Below, piece by piece: positions 660 through 58,998 of a stretch of 64,000 bases of DNA. The position numbers were made by a program, and so were the translations under genes. The stretch comes from Malacoraja senta (lineage: Eukaryota), in NCBI GenBank assembly GCA_038087875.1, contig CM075984.1, positions 18,042,001 to 18,106,000 of the forward strand. Reading direction: 5' to 3'. The notes under the pieces were generated by a model. The model saw only the letters and a program-made list of their open reading frames with translations, was not told where the DNA came from and did not search any database. Within the stretch, counting starts at the first letter, position 1, and each line of letters opens with the position of its first letter.

Positions 660-1390
660 ATTGCTATTAACTACATACTTTCCCCTTACATTTGACCTCC
701 CAAAGTGCAGTGCCTCACACTTGCTTGGATTAAACTCCATCTGCCATTTCTCTGCCCATTCCTGTAGCTGATTTATATATTGCTGTATACTTTGACAGCC
801 TTCCTCACTGTCCACAAATCAACCAATTTTGGTGTAATCTGCAAACCCACCAACCAATCCATCTTCACCTATGTCCAAAGATAGACACAAAATGCTGGAG
901 CAACTTAGCAGAACAGGCAGCATCTCTGGATAGAAGGAATAGGAGACATTTCAGGTCGAGACTCATCTTCAGAAGGGTTATGTCCGCCTTGTTTATATAT
1001 ATGATAAATAACAAACATCCCAACACAGATCGACAGATCACAGATCTCCAGCCAGAATAACATCCTTCCACCACAACCCTCGGTCATCTATATGATAGTT
1101 CTGAATCCAGATGACCAAATCACGATGGATCCCATGCATCTGAATCTTCTGAATCAGCCTGCCATCAAGGAAATTATCAAATGCCTTAATAAAGTCCATG
1201 TAGACAACATCAACCGCCCTACCTTCATCCATCATGTTTGCTGCATCCTCAAAAGAGTCAAACAACTTTGTACGACAAGACCTGCTGTGTACAAAGCCAC
1301 ACCGACTGTCCTCCTAGCCCATTCTTTTCCAAATGTGAGTAAGTCCTATCTCAAAAAAAACTCTCCAATAACTTCCTTACCTGTGAGCAG
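660..1390 (-). mobile_element. CR1 LINE RT fragment, interrupted at ~878-980 by a Penelope remnant
   Basis: ORF pieces WAEKWQMEFNPSKCEALHFG (624..815) and VDVVYMDFIKAFD (1038..1265) are typical CR1 RT motifs. Confidence 0.85.
878..980 (-). mobile_element. Penelope pLTR remnant
   Basis: gatagacacaaaatgctggag...cagcatctctgg...tttcaggtcgagactcatcttcaga; resembles the 3' end of the intact PLE. Confidence 0.75.
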
Positions 1391-11304: not shown

Positions 11305-11482
11305 CTTTCATTCATTTGTTCTATATCTCTTTATATCACCATTTATATCTCTCATTTCCTTTTCGCCTGACTCTCAGTCTGAAGAAGGGTCTCGACCTGA
11401 AATGTCACCTATTCCTTTTCTCCAGAGACACAGTTTGACCCGCTGAGTCGCTGAGTTACTCCAGCTTTTTGTGTCTATCTTG
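11305..11482 (+). mobile_element. Penelope 3' pLTR remnant with hammerhead-like core
   Basis: ctgaagaagggtctcgacctgaaatgtcacc followed by gctgagttactccagc. Confidence 0.8.
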
Positions 11483-11699
11483 GGTGTCAGAGAGCATGAA
11501 GCCACGGATGAAAATAATATTAAATTCATCACGGATGGCACATATCTCCATTTTACAAAGATTGCTTCTTGAAAGTTAAATAATATATAAAGTTGAACAA
11601 TTCATTTAAACCTTTCTTCCTTGTTTAAACATTAACTCATTAACACATTACACCAAATATCATCAGCCATTCAATCTTGATGAAAGGTTGATTTATCAA

Positions 11700-25112: not shown

Positions 25113-25534
25113 TTGTGGAGGACCTTCATCAGAAGGACTGTAGTAATTACATCTTTCCAAGGACAGTTAATAATGGGTGAGAAAAAAGCTGTGATAATGC
25201 CCTGATACTGACAAATTTGTGTGGTTCCATTGTTAAAAGTAATAATGTAACAGGATTGTACAACTGCAGTTGACCTGCATGGCGATGTTTCAGTAGTAAT
25301 TTGTTAAGGCTGATTAAGACAAAAGGGTGAGCCTTCTCAACATATGGTCAGTCTTAACTTTGGTCGCAGCACCAATCATCTTTGTGATAACAACGTCACT
25401 TTGTTTTATTGATAGCACTTTTCCTTTTGTGGCGCAAACCTTTTGCAGCCATTTGGCTCCCAATCCCTGCAAGGCCCTGTCACCACAATGGTTCCACCAG
25501 AACAAGTCAGCTACCATAACTGCATTTAAAAGAT

Positions 25535-25654
25535 GTTAAAGAAGGAACTTCAGACCCAAATAGAAGAAGGGTTTCGGCCCGAAAAGTTACCTATTTCCTT
25601 CGCTCCATAGATGCTGCTGCACCCGCTGAGTTTCTCCAGCATTTTTGTGTACCT
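25535..25654 (+). mobile_element. 120-bp mini-insertion of the young Penelope family with 14-bp TSD
   Basis: Near-identical to 52427-52518; TSD tgcatttaaaagat at 25521-25534 and 25655-25668. Confidence 0.9.
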
Positions 25655-25914
25655 TGCATTTAAAAGATATTTGGACAGGTACATGGATAGCAAAGTTTTT
25701 CGAGGAACATGGGCCAAATGCAGGACTAGTGCAGATGGGGTAACTTGGTCGGCATGGGACGTTTGGACCAAAGAGCCTGTTTTGCTGCTGGATGACTACA
25801 ACTCCATGAGCCCTGCGTGATAATAAACTTTAGGCAGTACCAACAGAGGCCCTGCCTTCATGCCTCATTGTTATGGGACAGCTTGCGCATCAACATCACT
25901 CTACACTCTTCCCA

Positions 25915-40875: not shown

Positions 40876-41646
40876 AATCAAAACAGTTTCTCATTCATTT
40901 CAAAATTTAGTCAGTAATGGCTGAAATAAGTTATCTTTTCCAACCTATTTCAGCTTTCAGTGAGAATATTACAAATTTGTGATGTATCCCAACTTTACCA
41001 ACCAAAACATTTGGTCAGGTACATGGACAGGAGAGGTTTTGAAGGTTAGGGGCCAAACACGGGCAGATGGGAATAATGTAGATTGTGCACCTTGGTCAGC
41101 ATGGGCAAGTTGGGCCGAAGGGCCTGCTTATGTGCTGTATGACTTTATGACGCTACTTACTCCCTTATGCAGGTTAAGAGGTTAAAAGAAAAAAACCCAC
41201 TATCAGACATAAAGTTAGCATTTGAAATATTGGCCGAATTGTACTGCTAAAATATGGCATTTCTACCTCGAATCTGCCTTTTAACCATGTGGAACTTGAG
41301 TCCTCTCCTATAAGTGAGTGCAAAGATTCTAAATAGCTACGTCGCTGATTGCTGCTTCATCTTGTCCACAGTCCTCTGGTGCCCAGAGGTTGCAGCACAA
41401 ATGCCCCACTGTTTACCAGTCGTTATGTTGGGAAATTTGCTTGCTGAACCTGTTCCAGCTTAACCCTGGCAGGATCAACAGGTGGGTGATCGGTGGGTAA
41501 GAATGGCTAGCAGCTCAGCAGAAAATTTGGGCCACAGTGGATGGAGCATTTGCTAAGTCCACCTTCACTCTTATTCATAAACCAGAGCGTGTTCCATTGA
41601 TTCAAATGGTGACTTTTCTACTTTGAGGACAATTATCCTTTTAATT

Positions 41647-41736
41647 GAAGAAGGGTCTTGACCCGAAACGTCACCTACTCCTTTGCTCCATAGATGCTGC
41701 CTCACCCACTGAGTTTCTCCAGCATTTTTGTCTACC
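41647..41736 (+). mobile_element. Penelope 3'-end mini-insertion with 12-bp TSD
   Basis: gaagaagggtcttgacccgaaacgtcacc...ttgtctacc; TSD atccttttaatt at 41635-41646 and 41737-41748. Confidence 0.85.
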
Positions 41737-42394
41737 ATCCTTTTAATTACATCCTTTATATTTAATCTTCCATTTCCCAGTATCCCATCTATGCACAAGG
41801 ATTAAAATGCATGAACAGGTACCTGGATAGAGGGGTAAGGGCCAAACACAGGCAAATGGTTCTAGCATGGATATGGCATCTTGGACGGCATGGATAAGTT
41901 GGGCCGAGAGTATGATGTACTTGCAGCAATTAGTTTCCTATTTTATCTCAAACTGGCTCAACTCATCCCTTTCCTTATTTATGTGGCATGTAAAAAGGTT
42001 TTTAGCGTGTCCTTATGCTGGCTACTCCCCCACCTTTCTCTATTTCTACTATAGCTTTGTTGCCAATGCTTTTGCGTTTTCAGATAGGAGATTAAACCAT
42101 GAAAATGAGCATGAAAATCCAAGCTTACATTCCAGTAAAATAGTGAAGGGAATGTTAGAGATCCTGCCTTTCATATAGGGAGTTAACATAGTCCCTAGTT
42201 GCTCTCCCAAACAGTCATACAAAACGCCATGGCAGAATGTATCAGTGAGCTCTGCCGATTCTTGACACAAAATTCAAAAAAGACCAGGGTGTTCAAACTC
42301 AAACCATAGGCATCTTGCTGAATAGATAATAGTTACGCCATTTGGTAGAGTATTGTCTCATGCAGAGCAGGGAGGGTTTGAGTTCAAGAAAGTC

Positions 42395-42750
42395 AAAAAT
42401 CTGCAGACAGTAGAAAACTGAAATACAAACAGAAAATGCTAGAGGAACTCAGCAGGACCAGCAGCATCTATGGAAGGAGACACAGTTCATGTTTCAGGTT
42501 GAAGACCTTTCTTCAATTCTGATGAAAGATCTTTGACCTGATACATTAACCCTGTCTCTCCACTGATTCTGTTTGACTTGCTGACTGTTTTCAATAGCCG
42601 CAAGGAACTGCAGATGCTGCTTTACAAAGAAAAGATGCAAAGTGCTGGGGTAACTCAGTGGGTCAGGTAGCATCTCTGGAGAACATGGATAGGTGAAGGA
42701 TAGGTTGGTCTGAAGAAGGGTCCCGACCCAAACCATCACCAATCCATGTT
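42395..42750. mobile_element. Two adjacent fold-back Penelope remnants
   Basis: ctgatgaaagatctttgacctg (42520) and ctgaagaagggtcccgaccc (42710) cores with inverted tails. Confidence 0.75.
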
Positions 42751-44605: not shown

Positions 44606-46231
44606 TATTAAACTAAAACTCTTCACTTTGTTCTTCACATTCTAAATGGTGTGTATGCAGGGTTGTGTTGGCTTTCTTTTAATCTCTTTAACTTGTATCT
44701 TCTTCAAACGCTTGGCCACAGCTTTCCCATTTTCACACATGCTACTCACATTTTCTCCACCGACCAGATACACATCTTCCCGTCACATTTCAACATATAT
44801 TTAACAAGTTACTAACCTTTTAAAAACAGCTTCAAAATGTAAACGTTTTCATAGTTCTAATTTTGAAGGAAAAAATGCCGACTGACATCACAATCAACTC
44901 GCAAGGCACGACAGAACACTCCATGCGGGAGGGGCACTCAAGCGCTCCAAACACAAAAAAATAATTTCACTCGCAAGTTGGGTCCTCGGGTTGACGCCCG
45001 CCCGCTGCCTGGTGAGGAGGCTGCTGCCGTGGGCCGAATCCAGCGACTGGGCCTGGGCTGGACCAGAGCCTGGAGCTGGAGTGAGGGCTGAGCTCGGGGC
45101 TTGGGATGGGGCCGCGACTGGGGCCGAAAAAGAAGCCGCTGGTGGAACCAAGAACGAGCCAGGGTTAGGGACGAGCCCGGAGATTAAGTTGGGGCCTGGG
45201 CTGGAGACCATGCGGCGGCCGAGCTGACGGCTGCAGTCTACAGCCAGGGCCGGGCTAAATATGAGAAGCAGTTCGAGTCCCAGGCCCTGGCGCTGCTCTA
45301 CGAGCTGGGTAGGTGCTGCGGCAGGGAATGGGAGTGAAGAGAGGATGAGGGAAATTAGGAGAATGGGGGAAATGAGGAGTGAGATGCGATGGGGTCTCTA
45401 CCCCCCTCCCTCTCTGCCCTTCCCCCACCCTCACTACCCCTCCCTCTCCCTCTATACCCACTCCTCCTCCCTCTATACCCACTCCTCCCTCTCTTCCCCC
45501 TCCTCCTCCCCCTCCCTCTCTACCCCCTCCCTCTACCTCTCTATCCCTCCCCTCTACATCTTCCCCCTCTATCCCCTCCCTCTCTATGCCCTCCCTTCCC
45601 TCTCTACCCCTCCCCTCCCCCTTTCTCTACCCCTCCCCCTCTACCCCTCCCCCCCCTTTCTCTACCCCTCCCCCTCTTCCCCCTCCCTCTCTGCCCTACC
45701 TCCCTCTCTGCCCCCTCCATCTATGCCCCCTCCCTCTCTGCCCCCTCCCTCTCTACTCCCCCTCCCTCTCTACCACCACTCTCTACCCCCCATCCCTCTC
45801 TAAGGAGTGATGAGTATTGGGACCTATGGGTGAGTGGTGGAGTATAGCATTTGGGGATCAGCCCTCCCCTGTTATGCCGCGTGCCCCCCCACCACTCAAT
45901 CTCTACCCCCTCCCTCTCCACGCCCTCCCCACTTCCTCTACCCTCCCTCTATACCCTCACTCCCTCCCAATCTACCCCTGCCCATCCCTCTCTACCCCCT
46001 CCCTCTCCCTCTCTAGCCACGCCTGCGCAGTTGGGGGCTATACGTGAGTGGATAGGGCGGGGGATGGAGGAATAGGAGCGAATGAGTAATATTAATATAA
46101 TATCAATGGGGGAGGTTAGTGTGTGTGTTTGTGGGGGGTGGGTACTGTGAGTGTGTGTGACGGCGCAGGCTCCCCCCCTCCTGCAACCACGCGTTGAGGG
46201 GACGGGACTCAACGGGTCCCACTTGGTCCAG
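44606..46231 (+). mobile_element. Non-autonomous Helitron, unit 2 (head-to-tail with unit 1)
   Basis: 3' hairpin gggactc-aac-gggtccc then acttggtCCAG|T; removing 44040-46231 rejoins the CR1 sequence cttgaatta|ttttatctt. Confidence 0.8.
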
Positions 46232-46478
46232 TTTTATCTTAAAACTCAGAAGGTTGAAAATGTATATAAAATTATGAGGCATAGATACAGTAGACAGTCA
46301 GAATCTTTTTCCCAGGATGGAAATGTCAATGACTAGAGGTCATAGCTTTTAGATGAGAGGAGCAAAGTTTAAAGGAGATGTGAGGGGAACATTTTTTACA
46401 AAGGTGAGTGGTGAGTGTTGGGAACATGTTGCTGGAGGAAGATACAATGATGGCCTGTAAGAGGCTTTTAGATAACTA
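46232..46478 (+). mobile_element. Middle piece of a CR1 3' fragment (other pieces ~44005-44039 and 55918-56040)
   Basis: Collinear with the CR1 at 26550-26970 and 56785-57222. Confidence 0.8.
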
Positions 46479-47437
46479 CTAGACCAAGTGCAGACCCGTT
46501 GGGTCTGTTCCCCCAAGGTGTGGTTGTGGGGGAGGGGGTGTGGGCTTGGGGGGGCGGCATGCGGCGCCACACACACTATCTACCCCCCCGCACAAACGCT
46601 AACTACTCCCCTTGATATTATATTAATATTATTACTTCGCTCCTTTTACCCCATAACTGCCCTATCCACTGACACATAGCCCCCAACTCGCAGGCGTGTC
46701 TAGAGAGACAGGGGAGGGGGGTAGAGAGTGAGGGCAGAGCGAGAATTGGAAGAGACAGAGGGAGAGGGGGGGTGGAGGGGAGGAGGAGGGTGGGGGAGGG
46801 GGAAGGAGAGGAGCAAGAGATGGGAGGAGAGAGAGAGGGGGAAAGGGGGGCTGAGAGGGGGGGAAGGGAAGGGGGAGAGGGGGTGGGAAGGGAGAGGGAG
46901 AGGTGGGGGAAGGGAGGGTGGAGGTGGATGGAAGGGGGAGGGAAGGGGGTGGAAGGAAGGGGGAAGGGGGTAGGGGAGGGATGGAGGGGAGGGTGTGCAG
47001 GTGGGAAGGCGGTTTAGGGGAGGGTGGGGGGGGGCAGGGGGTTGGGTGAGAGGAAGGGGGAGAGAGAGAGGGCGGGGGGAGAGAGAAAGGGAGGGGAGGA
47101 AGAGAGAGAGGTGAAAGAGAGAGAAGGGAGAGAGGGGAGAGAGGGAGAGGGCGGAGGGTGAGAGGGGGTAGGGAGAGAGAGGAGAGGGGGAAAGAGAGGG
47201 GGGGAGAGAGAGAGAGAGGAGGGGTGGGTCGACAACCCGAGCGAGGCATGGAGCGATCTGAGGACGGTGAAAAGCAGCGGTGGGACCAGCCGATCGTGGC
47301 TTCCGCCCACGTGACAGAGCTGGGCCGGGAAAGAGGGGGTGGGGGGGGGGGGCAGACGATCATCATAACTGCCAAGGTACACAAAAATGCTGGAGAAACT
47401 CAGCGGGTGCAGCAGCATCTATGGAGCGAAGGAAATA

Positions 47438-47472
47438 GGTAACGTTTCGGGCCGAAACCCTTCTTCAGACTG
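47438..47472 (-). ncRNA. Minimal hammerhead ribozyme motif, downstream pLTR
   Basis: CUGAAGA-A-GGGU(UUCG)GCCC-GAAAC-GUU on the minus strand. Confidence 0.75.
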
Positions 47473-47584
47473 ATAGGGGGTGGGGAGAAGAAAGGAAAAA
47501 AGGAAAAGGAGGAGGAGGAGCCCGAGGGTTGGGGGAGGGGAGGAGACAACCAGATGGCTGATGAAGGGGAGGGGACAGCCAGGG

Positions 47585-50500
47585 CTAGCAGAATTGGGAG
47601 AATTCAACGTTCAGGCCACCAGGGTGTAGACTGCCCAAGCGGAATATGAGGTGCATTTCCTCCAATTTACGGTGTTGCTCGCTGTGGCCATGGAGGAGAC
47701 CCAGGACAGAGAGGTCAGATACGGAATGGGAGGGGGAGTTGAAGTGCTGAGCCACCGGGAGTTCAGGTTGGTTATTGCGGACCGACCGGAGGTGTTCGGC
47801 GAAACGATCGCCAAGCCTCCGCTTGGTCTCACCGATGTAGATCAGCTGGCATCTAGAGCAGCGAATGCAATAGATGAGGTTGGAGGAGATGCAGGTGAAC
47901 CTCTGTCGCACCTGGAACGACTGCTTGGGTCCTGGAATGGAGTGGAGGGGGGAAGTGAAGGGACAAGTGTTGCATCTCTTGCGGTTGCAAGGGAAAGTAC
48001 CAGGGGAGGGGGTGGTATGGGAGGGAAGGGAAGAATTGACAAGGGAGTTACGGAGGGAGCGGTCTTTGCGGAAGGCAGACATAGGGGGAGATGGGAAGAT
48101 GTGGCGAGTGGTGGGGTCACGTTGGAGGTGGCGAAACTGACGGAGGATCACTTGTTGTATGTGACGGCTGGTGGGGTGAAAGGTGAGGACTAGGGGGACT
48201 CTGCCTTTGTTGTGAGTGGGGGGATGGGGAGAGAGAGCAGTGTTGCGGGGTATGGCAGAGACCCTGGTGCGAGCCTCATCTATGGTGGAGGAGGGGAACC
48301 CCCGTTCCCTGAAGAATGAGGACATTTCAGATGCCCTGGTGTGGAACGCCTCATCCTGGGAGCAGATGCGGCGTAGACGGAGGAATTGGGAGTGGGGGAT
48401 GGAGTCCTTACAGGAAGCAGGGTGGGAAGAAGTGTAGTCCAGATAGCCATGGGAGTCGGTAGGTTTGTAGTGGATGTCGGTAAGGAGTCTATCACCTGCG
48501 ATGGAGATAGTGAGGTCAAGGAATGGTAGGGAAGTGTCGGAAATGGTCCAGGTGTATTTAAGTGCCGGATGGAAGTTGGTGGTGAAGCGGATGAAGTCAG
48601 TCAGTTGTGTGTGGGTGCAGGATGTGGCACCAAAACAATCATCGATGTAGCGGAGGTAGAGGTCGGGGATGGGGCCCTGGTACGCATTGAACAGGGATTG
48701 TTCTACGTACCCGACAAAGAGGCAGGCGTAGCTGGGGCCCATGCGTGTGCCCATAGCTACGCCTTGTATTTGGAGGAAATGGGAGGAGTCGAATGAAAAG
48801 TTATTAAGTGTAAGTACCAGCTCCGCTAGGCGGAGGAGGGTGTCAGTGGCCGGGTATAGATTGCTTCTCCGGTCGAGGAAAAAACGGAGGGCTTTGAGAC
48901 CATCCTGGTGGGGGATGGAGGTGTACAGTGACTGGACGTCCATGGTGAAGATGAGGGGGTGAGGGCCTAGAGAGTGGAATGCGCGGAGATGACGGAGAGT
49001 GTCTGAGGTGTCTTGAACATAGGTGGGGAGGGATTTAACCAAGGGGGATAGTATGGAGTCGAGGTAGGTGGAGATGAGTTCGGTGGGGCAAGAACAGGCA
49101 GAGACAATGGGTCTACCGGGACAGTCAGGTTTGTGGATTTTGGGGAGAAGGTAAAAGCGGGCTGTGCGGGGCTGGGGAACGATGAGGTTGGAGGCTCGTT
49201 CGGGCAGGGCGTGGGAGTGGATGAAGTTGGTGATGGTGCTGGAGATGGTGGCCTGGTGCTCGTCAGTGGGGTCATGGTCCAGGGGTAAGTAGGAAGAGGT
49301 GTCCGAGAGTTGGCGCGTGGCCTCAGCTTTGTAGAGGTCGACGCGCCAGACTACCACGGCACCTCCCTTGTCGGCGGGTTTGATAACCCAATCTAGGTTG
49401 TTGCGGAGTGAGTCGATGGCAGTGCGTTCAAGGGGGGAGAGATTGGAGTGAGACAGGGGAGTGGAGAAGTTGAGGCGGTGGATGTCACGGCGGCAGTTTT
49501 TAATAAAGAGTTCTAAAGCCGGAAGGCTGCGAGGGGGGTTCCATGAGGATGGGGTGCGTTGGAGACGGGAAAAGGGGTCATCAGTGGGGAGCGAGGACTG
49601 CTTCCCATGGAAGTGAGCTGTGAGGCGGAGGCGACGGTAGAAGCGTTCCAAGTCATGGAGGGCACGGAACTCATTGAGATGGGGACGGAGGGGGACAAAG
49701 GTAAGACCTCTGCTGAGGACAGACCGTTCGATGTCGGAGAGGGGGAGGTCGGGGGGGATGGTGAACACCCGGCAGGGATGGGGGTTGGGGCCGGAGGAAG
49801 GCAGGTGGGTGTAATGGGGACGAGGCGATGTGTGGTGGGGGGGTGGTGGGTGGTCAGGGGGTGGGGGGGTGAGAGGGCAGTGGTGTGGGTGTGGAAGAGA
49901 AGTGGTCCCATAGTTGGAGAGGGATGGGGAAGAATCAGTGGAACTGCCACTGAGATAACCAGGGCTAGGCAGACTAGCGCTAGGACCCAGTGGAGTCAAA
50001 CCCCGGAGAGTGGGAGTGAACAGCGTGGAGGCTTCAGGCCCAGTACAGAGTCCAGTTTGCAGGTAAGGCGACGGCTGCGGGCTGCTGGAGGGAGGTGCGG
50101 TGGCGAGGGTCAGCGGACCCGACGGTCGGGGTCCGTGGGCAGTGTAGTCGGGGTCGGTGGGGCTGGAGGGCGTTGCAGTGGCGAGGGTCGGCGGACCCGA
50201 TGGTCGGGGTCCGTGGGCAGTGTAGTCGGGGTCGGTGGGGCTGGAGGGCGTTGCAGTGGCGAGGGTCGGCGGACCCGATGGTCGGGGTCCGTGGGCAGTG
50301 TAGTCGGGGTCGGTGGGGCTGGAGGGCGGTGCAGTGGCGAGGGTCGGCGGACCCGATGGTCGGGGTCCGTGGGCAGTGTAGTCGGGGTCGGTGGGGCTGG
50401 AGGTCGTTGCAGTGGCGAGGGTCGGCGGACCCGATGGTCGGGGTAGGTGGGCAGTAGAGTCGGGGTCCACGGGCGATGCGTGGGAGGTCCCGGTAAGCGG

Positions 50501-51457
50501 ATGGTCGGTGGGGCGGCGCGGTTCGACCAGTCCGGTGAGGCGACGGGGTGAATAGGGTGCGGTGCGGCGGCCAAGTTCGTGGATCCCTGGTCCGGCGGCC
50601 GTGTAGAGTGGGCCCGGTCCGGCGGCGATGCTGGATGGGCCCGGTCCGGCGGCGATGCTGGGAGGTCCCGGGGGGCGGCGAGGTTCGGAGGAATCGGCGA
50701 GGGGAAGGAAGTCCGAGTTACCGTAGAAGCGGCGAGCCTGGGCGTCATCGGTAGGCAGGTGAAGGTCGGCGGCAGCATCGACGTGGAGGTCGGTGAAGGC
50801 GACCTCCTGGTGAGTACTGGAGGCGCTCCCCGTGGACAAGATGGCGTCCTGGTGAGTACTGGAGTCGCTCCCCGTGGACAAGATGGCGTCGCGGGACCGG
50901 GGCAGGCGATGCGGGCCGGAGTTGGGGCCCGGAGCCAGCGGGCGGTCGAGTTGCGGAGAGTCGGCGGCGGGAGCGGCCTGGAGGCGGGCTAATTTAAGGT
51001 CCTTGGTGGAGTTGAGGTGGGCCAGGAATCTTTTATTGAAGAGGTGGATCTTCCGGCGGATAAAGTACAGTTGTGGTCCGTTGCAGGTCTGGGTGAGTGA
51101 GGCCCGAAGTTCCGGGAGAGTCAATGCGAGGTCCTGCTGATACCGGCGCATCGCAGTCAGTGTGGATCTCAGTGCCCGGGTGGAGAATTGTTGGGTATGC
51201 CGGTAGATAGCCAGTCGGTACCGATAGTCCGGCTGAGGTCCGAACTGGGAAGTAGGGAACTGGAGCTGGAAGCCATGAGGTATGAGATGGAGGCGCAGGC
51301 ATGCCCCGAGGAAGCAGATGTGGCTGTGGTATCGAGTTTGGGTAAGGATGTGGTCGTAGAGTTGGAGGGCAGGGGGGATCACAGAGATGGGGCAGTTAGC
51401 GAGTTGGGTGTGGAACAGTCTCCGGAGAGAGGAGGAGAACTTCTTCAAAGTAGGCAT
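47585..51457 (-). CDS. PLE polyprotein: N-terminal domain, Pro-rich repeats, reverse transcriptase, Cys linker, GIY-YIG endonuclease (1290 aa)
   Basis: IKPADKGGAVVV, PKIHKP..PGRPIVS, MDVQSLYTSIP, GVAMGTRMGPSYA, YLRYIDD, CNRKRCNTC, LIYCIRC..CQLIYIGETKRRLGDRFAEH; no internal stops. Confidence 0.96.
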   Translation of the reverse strand: MPTLKKFSSSLRRLFHTQLANCPISVIPPALQLYDHILTQTRYHSHICFLGACLRLHLIPHGFQLQFPTSQFGPQPDYRYRLAIYRHTQQFSTRALRSTLTAMRRYQQDLALTLPELRASLTQTCNGPQLYFIRRKIHLFNKRFLAHLNSTKDLKLARLQAAPAADSPQLDRPLAPGPNSGPHRLPRSRDAILSTGSDSSTHQDAILSTGSASSTHQEVAFTDLHVDAAADLHLPTDDAQARRFYGNSDFLPLADSSEPRRPPGPPSIAAGPGPSSIAAGPGPLYTAAGPGIHELGRRTAPYSPRRLTGLVEPRRPTDHPLTGTSHASPVDPDSTAHLPRPSGPPTLATATTSSPTDPDYTAHGPRPSGPPTLATAPPSSPTDPDYTAHGPRPSGPPTLATATPSSPTDPDYTAHGPRPSGPPTLATATPSSPTDPDYTAHGPRPSGPLTLATAPPSSSPQPSPYLQTGLCTGPEASTLFTPTLRGLTPLGPSASLPSPGYLSGSSTDSSPSLSNYGTTSLPHPHHCPLTPPPPDHPPPPHHTSPRPHYTHLPSSGPNPHPCRVFTIPPDLPLSDIERSVLSRGLTFVPLRPHLNEFRALHDLERFYRRLRLTAHFHGKQSSLPTDDPFSRLQRTPSSWNPPRSLPALELFIKNCRRDIHRLNFSTPLSHSNLSPLERTAIDSLRNNLDWVIKPADKGGAVVVWRVDLYKAEATRQLSDTSSYLPLDHDPTDEHQATISSTITNFIHSHALPERASNLIVPQPRTARFYLLPKIHKPDCPGRPIVSACSCPTELISTYLDSILSPLVKSLPTYVQDTSDTLRHLRAFHSLGPHPLIFTMDVQSLYTSIPHQDGLKALRFFLDRRSNLYPATDTLLRLAELVLTLNNFSFDSSHFLQIQGVAMGTRMGPSYACLFVGYVEQSLFNAYQGPIPDLYLRYIDDCFGATSCTHTQLTDFIRFTTNFHPALKYTWTISDTSLPFLDLTISIAGDRLLTDIHYKPTDSHGYLDYTSSHPASCKDSIPHSQFLRLRRICSQDEAFHTRASEMSSFFRERGFPSSTIDEARTRVSAIPRNTALSPHPPTHNKGRVPLVLTFHPTSRHIQQVILRQFRHLQRDPTTRHIFPSPPMSAFRKDRSLRNSLVNSSLPSHTTPSPGTFPCNRKRCNTCPFTSPLHSIPGPKQSFQVRQRFTCISSNLIYCIRCSRCQLIYIGETKRRLGDRFAEHLRSVRNNQPELPVAQHFNSPSHSVSDLSVLGLLHGHSEQHRKLEEMHLIFRLGSLHPGGLNVEFSQFC
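50085..50467 (-). repeat. In-frame 78-bp tandem repeat (~4.7 copies; 26-aa unit PDYTAHGPRPSGPPTLATATPSSPTD)
   Basis: Units start at 50175, 50253, 50331, 50409. Confidence 0.95.
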
Positions 51458-51589
51458 ACCTTGACGAGATTTCGCAGTGGAGTAGACAAAGTGTTAAAGA
51501 AGGAACTGCAGATGCTGGAAAATCGAAGGTACACAAAAATGCTGGAGAAACTCAGCGGGTGCAGCAGCATCTATGGAGCGAAGGAAATA

Positions 51590-51624
51590 GGTAACGTTTC
51601 GGGCCGAAACCCTTCTTCAGACTG
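51590..51624 (-). ncRNA. Minimal hammerhead ribozyme motif, upstream pLTR
   Basis: Identical to 47438-47472; about 130 nt upstream of the ATG. Confidence 0.75.
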
Positions 51625-52420
51625 ATAGGGGGTGGGGAGAAGAAAGGAAAAAAGGAAAAGGAGGAGGAGGAGCCCGAGGGTTGGGGGAGGGGAGGAGACA
51701 ACCAGATGGCTGATGAAGGGGAGGGGACAGCCAGGGCTAGCAGAATTGGGAGAATTCAACGTTCAGGCCACCAGGGTGTAGACTGCCCAAGCGGAATATG
51801 AGGTGCATTTCCTCCAATTTACGGTGTTGCTCGCTGTGGCCATGGAGGAGACCCAGGACAGAGAGGTCAGATACGGAATGGGAGGGGGGAGTTGAAGTGC
51901 TGAGCCACCGGGAGTTCAGGTTGGTTATTGCGGACCGACCGGAGGTGTTCGGCGAAACGATCGCCAAGCCTCCGCTTGGTCTCACCGATGTAGATCAGCT
52001 GGCATCTAGAGCAGCGAATGCAATACATTCGCTGCTCTAGATGCCAGCTGATCTACATCGGTGAGACCAAGCGGAGGCTTGGCAATCGTTTCGCCGAACA
52101 CCTCCGGTCGGTCCGCAATAACCAACCTGAACTCCCGGTGGCTCAGCACTTCAACTCCCCCTCCCATTCCGTATCTGACCTCTCTGTCCTGGGTCTCCTC
52201 CATGGCCACAGCGAGCAACACCGTAAATTGGAGGAAATGCACCTCATATTCCGCTTGGGCAGTCTACACCCTGGTGGCCTGAACGTTGAATTCTCCCAAT
52301 TCTGCTAGCCCTGGCTGTCCCCTCCCCTTCATCAGCCATCTGGTTGTCTCCTCCCCTCCCCCAACCCTCGGGCTCCTCCTCCTCCTTTTCCTTTTTTCCT
52401 TTCTTCTCCCCACCCCCTAT

Positions 52421-52455
52421 CAGTCTGAAGAAGGGTTTCGGCCCGAAACGTTACC
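52421..52455 (+). ncRNA. Minimal hammerhead ribozyme motif, inverted pLTR
   Basis: cagtCTGAAGAagggtttcggcccGAAACgttacc. Confidence 0.75.
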
Positions 52456-53122
52456 TATTTCCTTCGCTCCATAGATGCTGCTGCACCCGCTGAGTTTCTC
52501 CAGCATTTTTGTGTACCTTCGATTTTCCAGCATCTGCAGTTCCTTCTTTAACACAACATCATAACTGCCAGATGACAACAGCCGTTTAAAGCCGCTAAGG
52601 CAAGACGCGTTCGCCCAGGAGCGAGCGTTGACAGCAAAGAAGCACCGGCTTCTGGCTCTCTGGAAACCCACAGCTGGGATGGGCGGGGCTTCACGAGCTG
52701 CGCCGGCAGTGAGGAAAAGGTTCAGCGCAAGAGGCGCCGCTGATCCGAGATCTGCAGAAGAAAGATCCTATAGCGGAACGGAGCTGTAGAATATTTGTTC
52801 TGCAGAACTTTCTTGCCTTTAATCCACAGCGGGGGGAGGGGGGCAGGAGCCATGTGGGCCTTGATTGGTGGGCATGTGGGCATTGTGACGTGGAAGCTAG
52901 CAAGCGGCGCTTATATTTTAAAAAGTGAGTTTTGTGAACAACTTTATTCAAAATCTGGGGAAATAATTGACCGAATTTAGAGACGAGTGCATTTATGAAA
53001 TCGTAAGTTAAATCCCTACCGAAATGGAAAAAACTCTGCGTTTTTGCGTCTGGTTTTCGAGGAGATACGTTTCAAATGCAAAATGCCATACACCCACACA
53101 CACACAGAGTTTTAAAAGTATA

Positions 53123-55686
53123 CTAGACCAAGTGCAGACCCGTTGGGTCTGTTCCCGCAACGCGCGGTTGCAAGTGGGGACTGCCTGACGTCATCGCGCA
53201 ACACCACGTGCTAGGCGTACGCCGTCAAGACGCTGCGTACGAAGTCAAGATGCTGCGTACGCCCGTGGAGACGCTGCGTACGCCCTCAATGCGCCTGCGG
53301 GCCGACAGGCCGTTGACGCGCGGGATTTTCGGACGGTGCAAGCGTGCAGGCCGGCAGCGAGGACGGCGAAAAGCAGCGGGGGACAGCGTGACAGAGCTGC
53401 GCCCGGGGGGGGGGAGAGAGTGGAGGGTGGAAGAGCCGTTATGGTCGCGCGGCACGCGATGAGAAGGTGGCCAGCAGGAGGCGACAAAATGAGTGAGTGG
53501 GGGGGAAGGATTTTATTAAAAATGTGTACAGAAAAATGACGAAATTTAATGAGGAGTGGATATGCGAATGTAAAAGTAAAACGTTTTTGCGTGTGGTTTT
53601 GGCGGACCAACGAATCAAAGGCAAAATCAAAATGATATACACCCACACAGGAGAGAGGGGTGAGGAGAGAGGGGGGAGAGAGTGGGGAGGAGAGCAGGGA
53701 GGGTAAAGGGGAAGACAGGTGTAGGGGGAAGGGGTGTGGTAGAGGGGGAGAGAGGGTGGGTGAGGGAGGTAGAGAAGAGAGGGGAAGAGGGGAGAGGGAG
53801 ATTAGGGGGGAGAGAGAGAGTAGAGAGGGAGGGGGTGAGTGAGGGGAGGGGGAGAGAAGAGGGGGACAGTTGGAGGGGGAGAGAAAAGGAGGGGGGAGGT
53901 GGAGGGGAGAGAGAAGAGGAGGGGGAGAGGTGGAGAGGGGAGGGTGGAGAGGGGAGGGTGGAGAGGGGGAGGAGAATAAGAGGTGGAGGGGGTAGAAGGG
54001 AGGGGGGAAGAGTGGGGGAGGGAGAGGAGAGAGGGTGATAGAGGTGGGGGGGGAGAGGGGGATGTGGAGAGAGATTGGGGAGAGGAGAAGGAGGGAGTGG
54101 AGGGGGAGAGAGAGGATGGGGAGAGAGAAGGGTGGGAGAAAGGCATGGGGGTGGAAGGGAGGGACGGATGGGGAGAAAGAGATTAGAGGGGAGATAGAGA
54201 GATTAGAGGGGAGAGAGGGGGAGGTAGGGGGGAGAGAGAGGAGGGGGTGAGTGAGGGGGTGAGAGGAGAGGTGAGGGGGAGAAGAGGAGGGGGAGAGTTG
54301 GAGGGTGGAGAGAAGAGGAGAGGGAGAGGTGGAGGGGTGAGGTGGGGGAGAGAAGAGGAGGGGGAGTGGTGATGGGGAGAGTGGAGAGGGGGGAGGATAC
54401 GATGTGGAGGGGGTAGAGGGGAGGGGGATAAAAGGTAGGGGTGGAGGGTGAGAGAGGAGGGAGGAGAGAGTGGTAGAGGTGGGGGGGAGGGGGGGGAGGT
54501 GGAGAGAGATTGGATGGGGAGAGAGGAGAGGGAGAGAGAAGAGGGAGAGAGAGAGGTGAGAGAGAGAAGGGGGGAGCGAGAAGGGGGGAGAGAGAAGGGG
54601 AGAGGGAATGGCACAGGGAGGGAGGGAGGAGAAGAGAGAGAATAGAGGGGGGAGACAGTACAGGGGAAAGGGGGGGAGGAGGAGAGGAGGGGGTGAGTGA
54701 GGGTGGGAGAGAAGAGGAGGTTGGGGGGAGAGAAGAGGAGGGGGAGAGAGATGAGGAGGGGGGAGAGGTGGAGGGGATAGAGGAGAGGGGGTAGGGTAGG
54801 ACGGATAGAGGTGGAGGGGGGAGGGGGAGTGGAGGGCGGTAGAGAGGGAGGGGGTTAGATAGGGAGGGGGGAGGTGGAGGGGGGGAGAACAGGCGGGGAT
54901 GGAGGAGAGAAGAGGGGGGAAGGATGGGCAGGGGTAGAGGGGGAGGGGGAGTGGAGGGGGGTAGATAGGGAGGGGGTAGGACAAATTGCTCTATTTGATT
55001 GTGCACGCCAGGTTGATTGCATTCGTGGGTCCATTGTGCTTGTACATCTGTGAGATGGCTCTGTGAGTCATGCAGCTGTTTGATTTTAGTGGGCTCACGT
55101 GAAGATTCCAACCTCCTAGCCCTGACCCATTGTGATGTCATATCATAGGTAAATGAGATCCATTGTGATTGGACATCTGTGATGGCACTGTGAGTCATGC
55201 AGCAGCTCGCTGGCCAGCAGGATTCCAAAAAATCAGTGGTGGGGTGAAGGATGGATTTTATTTAAAAATGTGTACATAAAAATGTCTAAATCTAATGAGG
55301 AATGTGTTAGGGTATGTAAAAGTGTAATGTCTAGCGAAATGGAAAAAATCTCGGAGTTTCTGCGTGTGGTTTTGGCGGACCAAGGAATCNNNNNNNNNNN
55401 NNNNNNNNNNNNNNNNNNNNNNNNNNNNNNNNNNNNNNNNNNNNNNNNNNNNNNNNNNNNNNNNNNNNNNNNNNNNNNNNNNNNNNNNNNNNNNNNNNNN
55501 NNNNNNNNNNNNNNNNNNNNNNNNNNNNNNNNNNNNNNNNNNNNNNNNNNNNNNNNNNNNNNNNNNNNNNACATAAAAATGTCTAAATCTAATAAGGAGT
55601 GTGTTAGGGTATGTAGAAATGTAATGTCTAGCGAAATGGAAAAAATCTCGGAGTTTTCGCGTGTGGTTTTGGCGGACCAAGGAATC
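53123..55686 (-). mobile_element. Non-autonomous Helitron, unit 4 (minus); 5' end lost in the N gaps
   Basis: ctagaccaagtgcagacccgttgggtctgttccc is identical to 46479-46512; ~20-bp gacgctgcgtacg repeats; long purine tract; module 53510-53615 recurs at 55255-55389 and 55571-55686. Confidence 0.7.
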
Positions 55687-58814: not shown

Positions 58815-58998
58815 TAGAAACAAAGAACTGTAGATGCTGATTGGTACACTAAAGGACACGAAGTGCTGGAGTAACTCAGCAGGTCAGGCAGCATCTCTGG
58901 AGAACATGGGTAGGTAACGTTTCGGGTCAAGATCCTTCCCGAAACGACACCTGAGATGCTGCCTAACCTGCTGAATTACTCCAGCACTTATTGTGTCC
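58815..58998. mobile_element. Fold-back Penelope remnant
   Basis: gtgctggagtaactcagcaggtcaggcagcatctc...gagatgctgcctaacctgctgaattactccagcac. Confidence 0.85.

What the first reader, a model, noticed from the sequence alone, without database searches (positions are those of the whole stretch)
47361..52570. Intact, very recent Neptune-type Penelope element: a candidate active RT + GIY-YIG + ribozyme system
Seen: an uninterrupted 1290-aa ORF with YIDD RT, CxxxxCxxC linker and GIY-YIG; a perfect 14-bp TSD; and three pLTR copies differing only by about one G-run indel (~51885) and one substitution (~52084). Known: partial-tandem pLTRs supply the promoter for PLEs, and the Cys linker typifies the Neptune group. 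Inference: this is a transposition-competent master copy for the young family seen at 25535.
Basis: partly seen in the sequence, partly recalled or inferred. Interest (0 to 1): 0.75.

Follow-up and report, generated by a model that had tools for sequence, protein, structure and literature searches.

The report
Intact young Neptune-type Penelope retrotransposon
This is a complete, recently inserted copy of a Penelope-like jumping gene (reverse transcriptase plus GIY-YIG nuclease plus a minimal hammerhead ribozyme motif) with the complex insertion layout described for this class; it is a clean example of a known kind, and nothing shows that it is the family's master copy.

Summary
On the minus strand there is an uninterrupted 1290-aa ORF (47585-51457). 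The insertion is flanked by a perfect 14-bp target-site duplication. It holds three copies of the ~500-nt 3' end, which differ by one 1-nt indel and one substitution.

It forms a head-to-head palindrome with the direct pseudo-LTR and carries a 35-nt 'tail'. This is the published Penelope-like element (PLE) insertion layout.

The ORF keeps 114 of 115 residues that are at least 93% conserved in 120 relatives (DKG, YIDD, CX4CX2C linker, CCHH, GIY-YIG). A minimal hammerhead motif sits in each repeat copy (0 expected by chance). The same motif recurs, with compensatory helix II pairs, in relatives whose proteins are about 50% identical. Rfam does not detect it, and self-cleavage was not tested.

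One unusual feature is an in-frame, proline-rich insert of ~390 aa built of tandem repeats, between the N-terminal helical domain and the RT. Relatives lack it.

Public runs show a very abundant, 5'-truncated family that diversified under purifying selection (18 synonymous against 7 non-synonymous variant sites).

'Neptune-type' is supported by motifs only; no phylogeny with named references was possible. 'Master copy' and current activity are not shown. The scan has already noted many fragments of this family elsewhere in this genome; the notes I retrieved list no other intact copy.

The parts
47361..47374 (.). Target-site duplication, left copy (CATCATAACTGCCA). Base 47374 could equally be the last base of the element.
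   Evidence: family D17, 100%
47374..47872 (-). Copy A: the 3'-terminal ~499 nt of the element (last 288 nt of the ORF plus the 210-nt 3'UTR). It ends ...GTGTACCTT with no tail.
47441..47468 (-). Minimal hammerhead motif in copy A: CUGAAGA, bulged A, helix II GGGU/UUCG/GCCC, GAAA, CG, UU. Predicted cut between 47441 and 47440.
   Evidence: 0 hits in 100 shuffles; same layout in relatives; no Rfam hammerhead match at E<=1
47585..51457 (-). Single ORF, 1290 aa, intact.
   Evidence: 114/115 conserved columns kept
47609..47893 (-). GIY-YIG endonuclease with CCHH motif (aa 1189-1283: Y1196, C1200, C1203, Y1207, G1209, R1218, H1222, H1238, E1267, N1283).
   Evidence: Pfam GIY-YIG E=7e-4, below gathering
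47963..47989 (-). CX4CX2C Zn-finger-like linker (C1157, C1162, C1165).
48008..49768 (-). RT region with PLE N-terminal motifs (aa 564-1150: DKGG 696-699, D840, G899/G903, YIDD 937-940).
   Evidence: Pfam RVT_1 E=3e-6, below gathering
49778..50950 (-). In-frame insert of ~390 aa (aa ~170-560), rich in Pro/Ser/Thr and built partly of tandem repeats. It is absent from all 120 relatives.
   Evidence: no homolog occupancy; 0 stops in frame 1, open in 13/2000 shuffles; no splice sites
50084..50467 (-). 78-nt (26-aa) tandem repeat, 4.9 copies, inside the insert. Further arrays have periods 27 (50589-50671) and 42 (50805-50890).
50963..51457 (-). Conserved N-terminal all-helical domain (aa 1-165; helices 4-21, 27-55, 78-124, 127-161).
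   Evidence: homologs; pLDDT 90.7; no PDB fold match
51458..51525 (-). 5'UTR of the full-length unit. Its first 35 nt (51491-51525) are the 'tail' sequence.
51526..52025 (-). Copy B: direct pseudo-LTR (partial tandem copy of the 3' end), with one extra base near 51885.
51593..51620 (-). Minimal hammerhead motif in copy B.
52026..52554 (+). Copy C: inverted, 5'-truncated copy (494 nt of the 3' end plus the 35-nt tail at 52520-52554), with one substitution at 52084. With B it forms a palindrome with 530-nt arms and a 5-nt spacer.
   Evidence: (I1-I3)
52425..52452 (+). Minimal hammerhead motif in copy C.
52555..52556 (.). Two filler bases (AA) between the tail and the TSD.
52557..52570 (.). Target-site duplication, right copy.

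Best explanation
A single, recent retrotransposition event placed a full-length canonical (C-terminal endonuclease) Penelope-like element of the linker-bearing, Neptune type here, on the minus strand.

Shown:
- One intact ORF encodes, in order: an N-terminal helical domain; a lineage-specific proline-rich repeat insert of ~390 aa; the PLE reverse transcriptase; a CX4CX2C linker; and a GIY-YIG/CCHH endonuclease.
- Each of the three copies of the 3' end carries a minimal hammerhead motif.

Inferred, from the layout and from in-vitro work on the Anolis Poseidon element PAc (PMC11167929):
- The endonuclease cut both target strands 14 bp apart.
- Both 3'-OH ends primed reverse transcription on element RNA, at two adjacent internal start sites.
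- The lower-coordinate end started at site 1 (no tail). It ran through the whole unit and ~500 nt further into the upstream repeat of a longer-than-unit RNA, which produced the pseudo-LTR.
- The other end started 35 nt further downstream in the RNA (the tail) and copied 529 nt.
- The two cDNAs met head-to-head at nearly the same template position (5 nt apart), giving the palindrome.

The hammerhead probably processes the RNA, possibly helped by the protein. This insertion was made from RNA that had not been cut at either hammerhead. The copy is structurally capable of encoding an active protein. Whether it is transcribed or still mobile is not known.
For: - ORF, TSD and repeats.
- 540 homologs with E down to 1e-241, all of the PLE-type architecture RVT_1 / HTH_animal / DUF8422, some also with GIY-YIG.
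- 114 of 115 strongly conserved residues are kept, including all catalytic and Zn-finger-like motifs.
- The min-HHR descriptor hits only the three repeat copies, with 0 hits in 100 shuffles.
- The same motif lies on the sense strand of the untranslated spacer in 4 of 6 relatives' loci, against 0.125 expected. Helix II pair 3 is G-C, C-G or A-U. The bulged base and the G10.1-C11.1 pair are kept. These are the features listed by Cervera and De la Pena 2014.
- The inverted 5'-truncated copy and the 30-40-bp tail are published PLE traits (PMC8557442).
- For PAc it was shown in vitro that both strands are nicked and extended, that there are two adjacent internal RT start sites, and that the tail is the stretch between them (PMC11167929).
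- Contigs of other family copies end either without a tail (52520) or at about the tail's end (52553-52555) (table 7).
- The mini-insertion at 25522-25668 also has an inverted tail piece at its upstream end.
- Family variant sites in the ORF are 18 synonymous against 7 non-synonymous, with 28% synonymous expected; p=6e-6.
- Depth rises about 50-fold from the 5' to the 3' end, the usual 5'-truncation profile.
Against: - No Rfam hammerhead family matches at E<=1.
- The motif region folds no better than shuffled sequence (z=0.42), and helix I is only 2+2 bp. Self-cleavage is not shown.
- RVT_1 and GIY-YIG are below Pfam gathering scores.
- No phylogeny with named Neptune references could be made.
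- The two-strand priming model is carried over from a Poseidon element and was not tested for this family. Snap-back synthesis at the end of the first cDNA would also give the B/C palindrome.
- The RNA-labelled runs give no locus-specific or strand-specific evidence of transcription.
- The insert might impair the protein.
Confidence: 0.85

Rival explanations
1. One reading: this very copy is the transposition-competent master that produced the young family, including the mini-copy at 25535.
For: - Intact ORF with all conserved residues.
- Repeats differ at only 2 positions in ~1500 nt.
- The mini-copy is 97-99% identical to its 3' end.
Against: - Contig depth shows very many near-identical paralogues.
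- At five or more ORF sites, 90% or more of the family depth carries another letter (47-48.9 kb, 49337, 49480, 50588).
- The mini-copy has GAAAA where this copy has GAAAC.
- It is unknown whether the 500-nt pseudo-LTR carries a promoter. A transcript starting at its 5' end would have a 568-nt leader with four upstream ATGs.
Confidence: 0.07
2. Young but inert copy: intact by recency only. It is never transcribed from this site, being embedded in a repeat array, possibly without a promoter or silenced. The head-to-head palindrome would form a ~530-bp hairpin only in a transcript that reads through both arms.
For: - No locus-specific transcript evidence.
- The perfect 530-nt inverted repeat would form a long hairpin in any read-through RNA.
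- The insertion lies inside GA/CT-rich repeats.
Against: - Nothing in the sequence disables it.
- The insert-bearing 5' part is present in several copies in two organism labels (X1 bins and X3 contigs). Copies of this design have therefore propagated.
Confidence: 0.3
3. The ~1.15-kb proline-rich stretch is not translated as part of the protein. It would be a retained intron or a minisatellite that is open by chance, so the real product would resemble the ~900-aa relatives.
For: - Relatives join the N-terminal domain to the RT by about 20 aa.
- The stretch is 69% G+C, and sense frame 2 has only 2 stops.
- PLEs are known to retain introns (PMC8557442).
- RNA-labelled run X17 has no depth over most of it.
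Against: - Frame 1 has 0 stops in 383 codons; only 13 of 2000 shuffles stay open.
- All three tandem arrays have periods divisible by 3: 78, 27 and 42.
- No usable GT donor exists near the start of the insert, and there is no in-frame GT-AG pair.
- In run X1, depth over the insert equals that of the adjoining N-terminal domain region. DNA copies therefore keep it.
Confidence: 0.1
4. The inverted copy is an assembly artefact (a fold-back chimera), and the real insertion is only pseudo-LTR plus unit.
For: Complex PLE insertions are known to upset assemblies (PMC8557442).
Against: - The second TSD copy lies outside the inverted copy, after its tail and 2 filler bases. An artefact would not recreate it.
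- The inverted copy has its own private substitution.
- The same design is seen in the mini-insertion at 25522-25668.
Confidence: 0.03

Closest known systems
Neptune clade of EN+ Penelope-like elements (first described in fish; Arkhipova 2006; Craig et al. 2021, PMC8557442)
   Same: - Single ORF with RT followed by a C-terminal GIY-YIG/CCHH endonuclease.
- CX2-5CxxC linker and DKG motif.
- Pseudo-LTR, inverted truncated copy and tail.
- Hammerhead motif in the repeat.
- Vertebrate host.
   Different: - The nearest protein among 1.84 billion representatives is only 50% identical.
- A ~390-aa repeat-built insert lies between the N-terminal domain and the RT.
- Membership rests on motifs, plus elimination: vertebrates are reported to carry only Neptune and Poseidon (preprint 10.64898/2026.07.22.740005). 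It does not rest on a tree with named references.
Poseidon_Ac (PAc) of Anolis carolinensis, the only PLE reconstituted in vitro (Frangieh et al. 2024, PMC11167929)
   Same: - Two alternative element ends 35 nt apart, matching two adjacent internal RT start sites with the tail between them.
- An element copy primed at each end of the target, matching nicking and extension of both strands.
- A long N-terminal helical domain (predicted to dimerise in PAc).
- A hammerhead that was not used for this insertion.
   Different: - PAc belongs to the linker-less Penelope/Poseidon clade.
- Its hammerhead overlaps the start codon and its RT start sites lie inside the ORF. Here the hammerhead is 117 nt past the stop codon and the start sites lie at the 3'UTR/5'UTR junction.
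- Nothing was tested biochemically here.
Minimal hammerheads of metazoan PLEs (Cervera and De la Pena 2014, PMC4209133) and non-LTR retrozymes
   Same: - CUGANGA and GAAA boxes.
- An extra base between positions 9 and 10.1.
- G10.1-C11.1 pair.
- Palindromic 15.2/16.2 with no closed helix III, which implies action as a dimer.
- Massive dispersal as short 3'-end fragments.
   Different: - The cleavage triplet is GUU in this young family, against GUC in older fragments and in relatives.
- Helix I is very weak.
- The motif is below detection by all Rfam hammerhead models.
Penelope of Drosophila virilis
   Same: - Direct or inverted terminal repeats.
- RT plus GIY-YIG.
- Variable TSD.
   Different: Penelope lacks the Cys linker. 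Its pseudo-LTR contains an intron, and its hammerhead variant has a closed helix III.

Membership tests
Canonical C-terminal EN+ Penelope-like element | PLE-type RT with upstream DKG motif and catalytic YxDD | tested here: met
   D696 K697 G698 G699, D840 and I938 D939 D940 all fall in columns at least 93% conserved in 120 homologs. There are 540 homologs at E<=1e-3.
Canonical C-terminal EN+ Penelope-like element | C-terminal GIY-YIG nuclease with CCHH motif, two Cys between GIY and YIG, and the R, H, E, N residues | tested here: met
   Y1196, C1200, C1203, Y1207, G1209, R1218, H1222, H1238, E1267 and N1283. Pfam GIY-YIG is below its cut-off.
Canonical C-terminal EN+ Penelope-like element | Partial-tandem pseudo-LTR, optional inverted 5'-truncated copy, 30-40-bp tail at one end, TSD | tested here: met
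   Direct 500-nt copy B, inverted 494-nt copy C with a 35-nt tail, and a 14-bp TSD. Definition taken from PMC8557442.
Canonical C-terminal EN+ Penelope-like element | Hammerhead ribozyme motif in the pseudo-LTR | tested here: met
   The min-HHR descriptor hits once in each of A, B and C, with 0 hits in shuffles. The motif is conserved with compensatory pairs in relatives. Cleavage itself was not tested.
Rfam hammerhead families (Hammerhead_1, HH9, HH10, II, 3) | Score at or above the gathering threshold of a curated covariance model | tested here: not met
   No hammerhead match at E<=1 in 46500-53500. This is expected for motifs without a closed helix III.
Neptune clade | CX2-5CxxC Zn-finger-like linker between RT and EN | tested here: met
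   C1157-x4-C1162-x2-C1165. 75 of 98 near-full-length nearest representatives carry both the linker and CCHH.
Neptune clade | RT groups with named Neptune references rather than Nematis in a phylogeny | not testable with these tools
   No named PLE references (Repbase) are reachable, and the libraries carry no clade names. The paper's supplements are not held. Indirect argument: vertebrates are reported to carry only Neptune and Poseidon.
Penelope/Poseidon clade | No CX2-5CxxC linker upstream of GIY-YIG | tested here: not met
   The linker is present, so the element is not filed here.
Naiad/Chlamys (N-terminal EN) clades | GIY-YIG at the N-terminus, CxC motif, DKA instead of DKG | tested here: not met
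   The EN is C-terminal and the motif is DKG.
Currently active (autonomous) element | Transcription from its own pseudo-LTR, and insertion polymorphism or daughter copies | tested here: inconclusive
   Only contigs of a multicopy family could be laid. RNA-labelled runs hold RT-EN and repeat pieces at least 95% alike, but nothing that is locus-specific. No empty-site joint was listed.

The most novel reading that the evidence does not exclude
The ~390-aa proline-rich insert made of tandem repeats is a functional, fast-evolving module. It might act as a spacer or a host-factor or condensate interface placed just after the dimerising N-terminal helices. On this reading it was acquired by the lineage that became the autonomous driver of this genome's enormous population of hammerhead-bearing Penelope tails.
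Probability: 0.2. Interest if true: 0.55.

Novelty: new member of a known kind. Interest (0 to 1): 0.35.

Why it matters
- Full-length, uncorrupted PLE copies are rare because the class is extremely 5'-truncated. According to earlier notes of this scan (not tested here), this genome holds about half a million hammerhead-bearing PLE tail fragments. An intact autonomous copy gives those fragments a candidate parent design.
- The insertion is a natural record of the mechanism reconstituted in vitro for a Poseidon element: both strands primed, two adjacent internal start sites, and a tail. Here it is seen in the other major vertebrate clade.
- The copy could serve for biochemical study of Neptune-type RT/EN and of protein-assisted minimal hammerheads.
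- None of this changes what is known about the class.

Tried and rejected
- **Rfam scan:** no hammerhead match. The only matches, microRNA families at 51976-52070, are the B/C palindrome scoring as a hairpin. I rejected them.
- **Thermodynamic folding of the 3' end:** no better than shuffles. The hammerhead is not the minimum-energy fold.
- **Sequence search of solved structures:** nothing.
- **Foldseek of the N-terminal domain model against the PDB:** only generic helical bundles, best E=0.7.
- **Pfam on the insert and on the N-terminal domain:** nothing.
- **Intron hypothesis for the insert:** no donor or acceptor pair.
- **Paralogous empty site in the window:** none.
- **DNA of the closest ENA relatives:** not available. 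JGI and Logan relatives were used instead.
- **Supplementary alignments of Craig et al.:** not held.
- **Dating from A/B divergence:** rejected as a clean clock. In PLEs the two repeats are copied from different parts of the template RNA and need not be identical at insertion. I give only a rough bound of no more than a few million years.

Full report
**Observation.**
- The minus strand carries an uninterrupted ORF of 1290 aa at 47585-51457.
- The 14-mer CATCATAACTGCCA occurs at 47361-47374 and at 52557-52570, exactly at the outer limits of the repeated sequence.
- The last ~500 nt of the element occur three times.
  - Copy A (47374-47872) is the true 3' end: the last 288 nt of the ORF plus a 210-nt 3'UTR.
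  - Copy B (51526-52025) is a direct repeat upstream of the ORF.
  - Copy C (52026-52519) is the third copy.
- A and B differ only by one extra base in a G run near 51885. C differs from both only by one substitution at 52084.
  - B and C abut head-to-head with a 5-nt spacer.
  - C continues for 35 nt (52520-52554) that equal the first 35 nt of the 5'UTR (51491-51525).
  - Two filler bases precede the right TSD.

**What the ORF encodes.**
- A word-indexed search found 540 relatives, down to E=1e-241 and at most 54% identical. All have the RVT_1 / DUF8422 / HTH_animal architecture typical of PLE proteins, some also with GIY-YIG.
- An exhaustive HMMER search of 1.84 billion representatives found 3959 at E<=1e-30. 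None was closer than 50% identity; one 416-aa fragment reached 62%. The family itself is therefore not represented in public protein predictions.
- In an alignment with 120 relatives, the query keeps the majority residue at 114 of the 115 columns that are at least 93% conserved. The exception is a conservative Y1054F.
- Residues kept include DKGG 696-699, D840, YIDD 937-940, the linker C1157-x4-C1162-x2-C1165, Y1196, C1200, C1203, Y1207, G1209, R1218, H1222, H1238, E1267 and N1283.
- Pfam's RVT_1 and GIY-YIG models match but stay below their gathering scores. No solved structure matches by sequence.

**N-terminal domain and insert.**
- Relatives of about 900 aa have an N-terminal domain matching query residues 1 to about 165. 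A linker of about 20 aa then leads directly to the motif VVTIPDDLPLS, which in the query (VFTIPPDLPLS) lies at about residue 564.
- The domain is predicted with pLDDT 90.7 as four long helices. It has no specific PDB fold match.
- In the Anolis Poseidon element, an equivalent long helix is predicted to mediate head-to-tail dimerisation (PMC11167929).
- Between this domain and the RT, the query has about 390 aa that no relative has.
  - They are 21% Pro, 13% Ser and 12% Thr.
  - They contain tandem arrays of period 78 (4.9 copies), 27 and 42 nt, all multiples of three.
  - The coding frame has no stop in 383 codons, which happens in 13 of 2000 shuffles. The other sense frames have 2 and 8 stops.
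  - Differences between the 26-aa units are all non-synonymous.
  - There is no plausible splice donor and no in-frame GT-AG pair.
- I read this as a translated, disordered linker that expanded by repeat slippage and is constrained only to stay in frame.
- In run X1, contig depth over the insert equals that over the adjoining N-terminal domain region. In organism C it is 10-100 times lower than in the flanks, and in an RNA-labelled run of organism H it is absent over most of the insert. Contigs of organism B cover it at 99-100% identity.
- The insert is therefore a stable feature of this sub-lineage and not a private accident of this copy.

**Hammerhead.**
- Rfam finds no hammerhead family at E<=1. 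Its only matches are microRNA models scoring the B/C palindrome, which I discard.
- I wrote a descriptor after Cervera and De la Pena 2014 (PMC4209133). It requires CUGANGA, an optional bulge, a helix II of at least 4 bp closed by G10.1-C11.1, GAAA, complementary 15.2/16.2, and then U and H.
- It hits exactly three times in the 64-kb window, once in each of A, B and C. It hit zero times in 100 dinucleotide shuffles.
- The motif reads CUGAAGA-A-GGGU(UUCG)GCCC-GAAA-CG-UU. It has the extra base after position 9, the G10.1-C11.1 pair and the palindromic CG that the paper lists as non-imposed hallmarks.
- I fetched DNA for six relatives whose proteins are 47-51% identical to the query. Four carry the same layout on the sense strand of the untranslated spacer, against 0.125 hits expected.
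  - Helix II pair 3 is G-C, C-G or A-U.
  - Pair 4 is U-G, U-A or C-G.
- This conservation supports a selected RNA motif. Activity is not shown.
  - The region folds no better than shuffles (z=0.42).
  - Helix I is 2+2 bp.
  - This class of motif is reported to work only as a dimer or with protein help.
- The ends of this insertion (47375 and 52025) are not at the predicted cleavage sites. The template RNA was therefore not cut at either hammerhead. This agrees with the in-vitro finding that cleavage is dispensable for insertion.

**How the insertion was made (inference).**
- Craig et al. 2021 describe the layout as standard for PLEs: a full-length unit preceded by a partial tandem copy, often with an inverted 5'-truncated copy at the 5' side and a 30-40-bp tail at one end (PMC8557442).
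- Frangieh et al. 2024 showed the following for the Poseidon element PAc.
  - The protein nicks and extends both target strands.
  - Reverse transcription starts at two adjacent internal sites of the RNA that are not homologous to the target.
  - The tail is the stretch between those sites.
- This insertion fits that scheme.
  - An element 3' end abuts the TSD at both sides.
  - One end has no tail (site 1, ...GTGTACCTT). The other has 35 more nt (site 2, ...CTTTAACAC).
- Contigs of other family copies end at the no-tail position (52520) or at about the tail's end (52553-52555) and then run into unrelated flanks (table 7).
- The mini-insertion at 25522-25668 has a 14-bp TSD. It carries 20 nt of inverted tail at its upstream side, then 8 nt of filler, and then the last ~95 nt of the element.
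- The two arms B and C stop within 5 nt of the same template position. This suggests run-off at a common RNA 5' end about 500 nt upstream of site 1, inside the EN-coding sequence. Snap-back synthesis is an alternative for the large insertion, but it does not explain the mini-insertion.

**Age and family.**
- Two differences in ~1500 nt of repeat, a perfect TSD and an intact 3.9-kb ORF indicate a young insertion.
- Because A and B are copied from different parts of a longer-than-unit RNA, their divergence is not a strict clock. I give only a bound of no more than a few million years.
- Laying contigs of four public runs (coded organisms A, B, C and H) shows an enormous, heterogeneous family. 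About 100,000 contigs were laid for each of two runs. Depth rises about 50-fold from the 5' to the 3' end, the signature of 5' truncation.
- Of the 25 variant sites reported inside the ORF, 18 are synonymous against 28% expected (p=6e-6). The family therefore diversified while its ORF was under selection, as expected for lineages that kept transposing.
- At five ORF sites, 90% or more of the depth carries a different letter from this copy. Four of those five are synonymous. This copy therefore belongs to a minor sub-lineage and is not the family's centre.

**Clade.**
- The Cys linker excludes Penelope/Poseidon. The C-terminal EN and the DKG motif exclude Naiad/Chlamys. The CCHH motif excludes Hydra (definitions from PMC8557442).
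- The linker is shared by Neptune and Nematis. I could not obtain named references for a tree.
- A 2026 preprint reports only Neptune and Poseidon in vertebrates, including a chondrichthyan. Earlier notes of this scan call the host a cartilaginous fish, a ray or skate. I did not test that.
- Among 98 near-full-length nearest representatives, 75 carry both the linker and CCHH. 'Neptune-type' is thus likely but not proven.

**Activity.**
- Nothing in the sequence disables the copy.
- Not shown: a promoter in the 500-nt pseudo-LTR, a locus-specific transcript, or polymorphism.
- A transcript starting at the 5' end of B would have a 568-nt leader with four upstream ATGs. Cutting at the hammerhead would leave 135 nt with one.
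- B and C are divergent, so the palindrome would form a hairpin RNA only in read-through transcripts.

**Verdict.** This is a well-preserved new member of a known kind. It has one unusual feature (the insert) and gives a useful natural illustration of the two-strand, two-site initiation model. The scan has already recorded many fragments of this family elsewhere in this genome. Among the notes I retrieved, no other intact full-length copy was listed.

Noticed in passing
window 25522-25668: Mini-insertion of the same young family. It has a 14-bp TSD (TGCATTTAAAAGAT). After the upstream TSD come 20 nt of inverted 'tail', 8 nt of filler, and then the last ~95 nt of the element, starting inside the CUGANGA box. 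Its hammerhead box reads GAAAA instead of GAAAC.
   Followed up: partly
window 878-973, 11371-11483, 41646-41739, 42433-42515, 58818-58938: Older fragments (73-88% identical) of the last ~100 nt of the element. Only 11379-11406 meets the relaxed hammerhead descriptor; the others have an incomplete or mutated core. The copies at 42433 and 58818 carry a direct tail. Those that keep the cleavage triplet mostly read GUC, where the young family has GUU.
   Followed up: partly
window 45500-47360 and 53660-54990: The element sits inside long CT-rich and GA-rich low-complexity arrays, with repeated landmarks 6.1-6.6 kb apart across the insertion. Other notes of the scan call these Helitron units. I did not examine them.
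   Followed up: no
window 51976-52070: Rfam microRNA models (MIR845_1, mir-999, mir-5365) score up to 51 bits here. This is only because the B/C junction is a perfect hairpin; all scores are below gathering.
   Followed up: yes
L001 2895-3386; L002-L005 ends: Contigs of relatives are tandem or wrapped. L001 holds two head-to-tail 930-aa ORFs separated by (TG)n and (GA)n microsatellites and lacks a canonical hammerhead core. In L002-L005 the first 30-87 nt equal the last, which indicates tandem or circular assembly paths.
   Followed up: partly
runs X1-X22 laid on or ranked against window 47161-52770: Runs labelled as eight different organisms hold pieces of this stretch as near-exact sampled 31-letter words. 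In the four runs laid, the pieces are at least 95% identical. Contigs of organism B are 99.4-100% identical, including over the insert. Names are coded, so recent common descent, a slow clock and transfer between species cannot be told apart.
   Followed up: no
window 51445-51570 (minus strand): An upstream ATG at 51570 opens a 41-codon reading frame that overlaps the main start codon out of frame. It would remain in the leader even after the predicted hammerhead cut.
   Followed up: no
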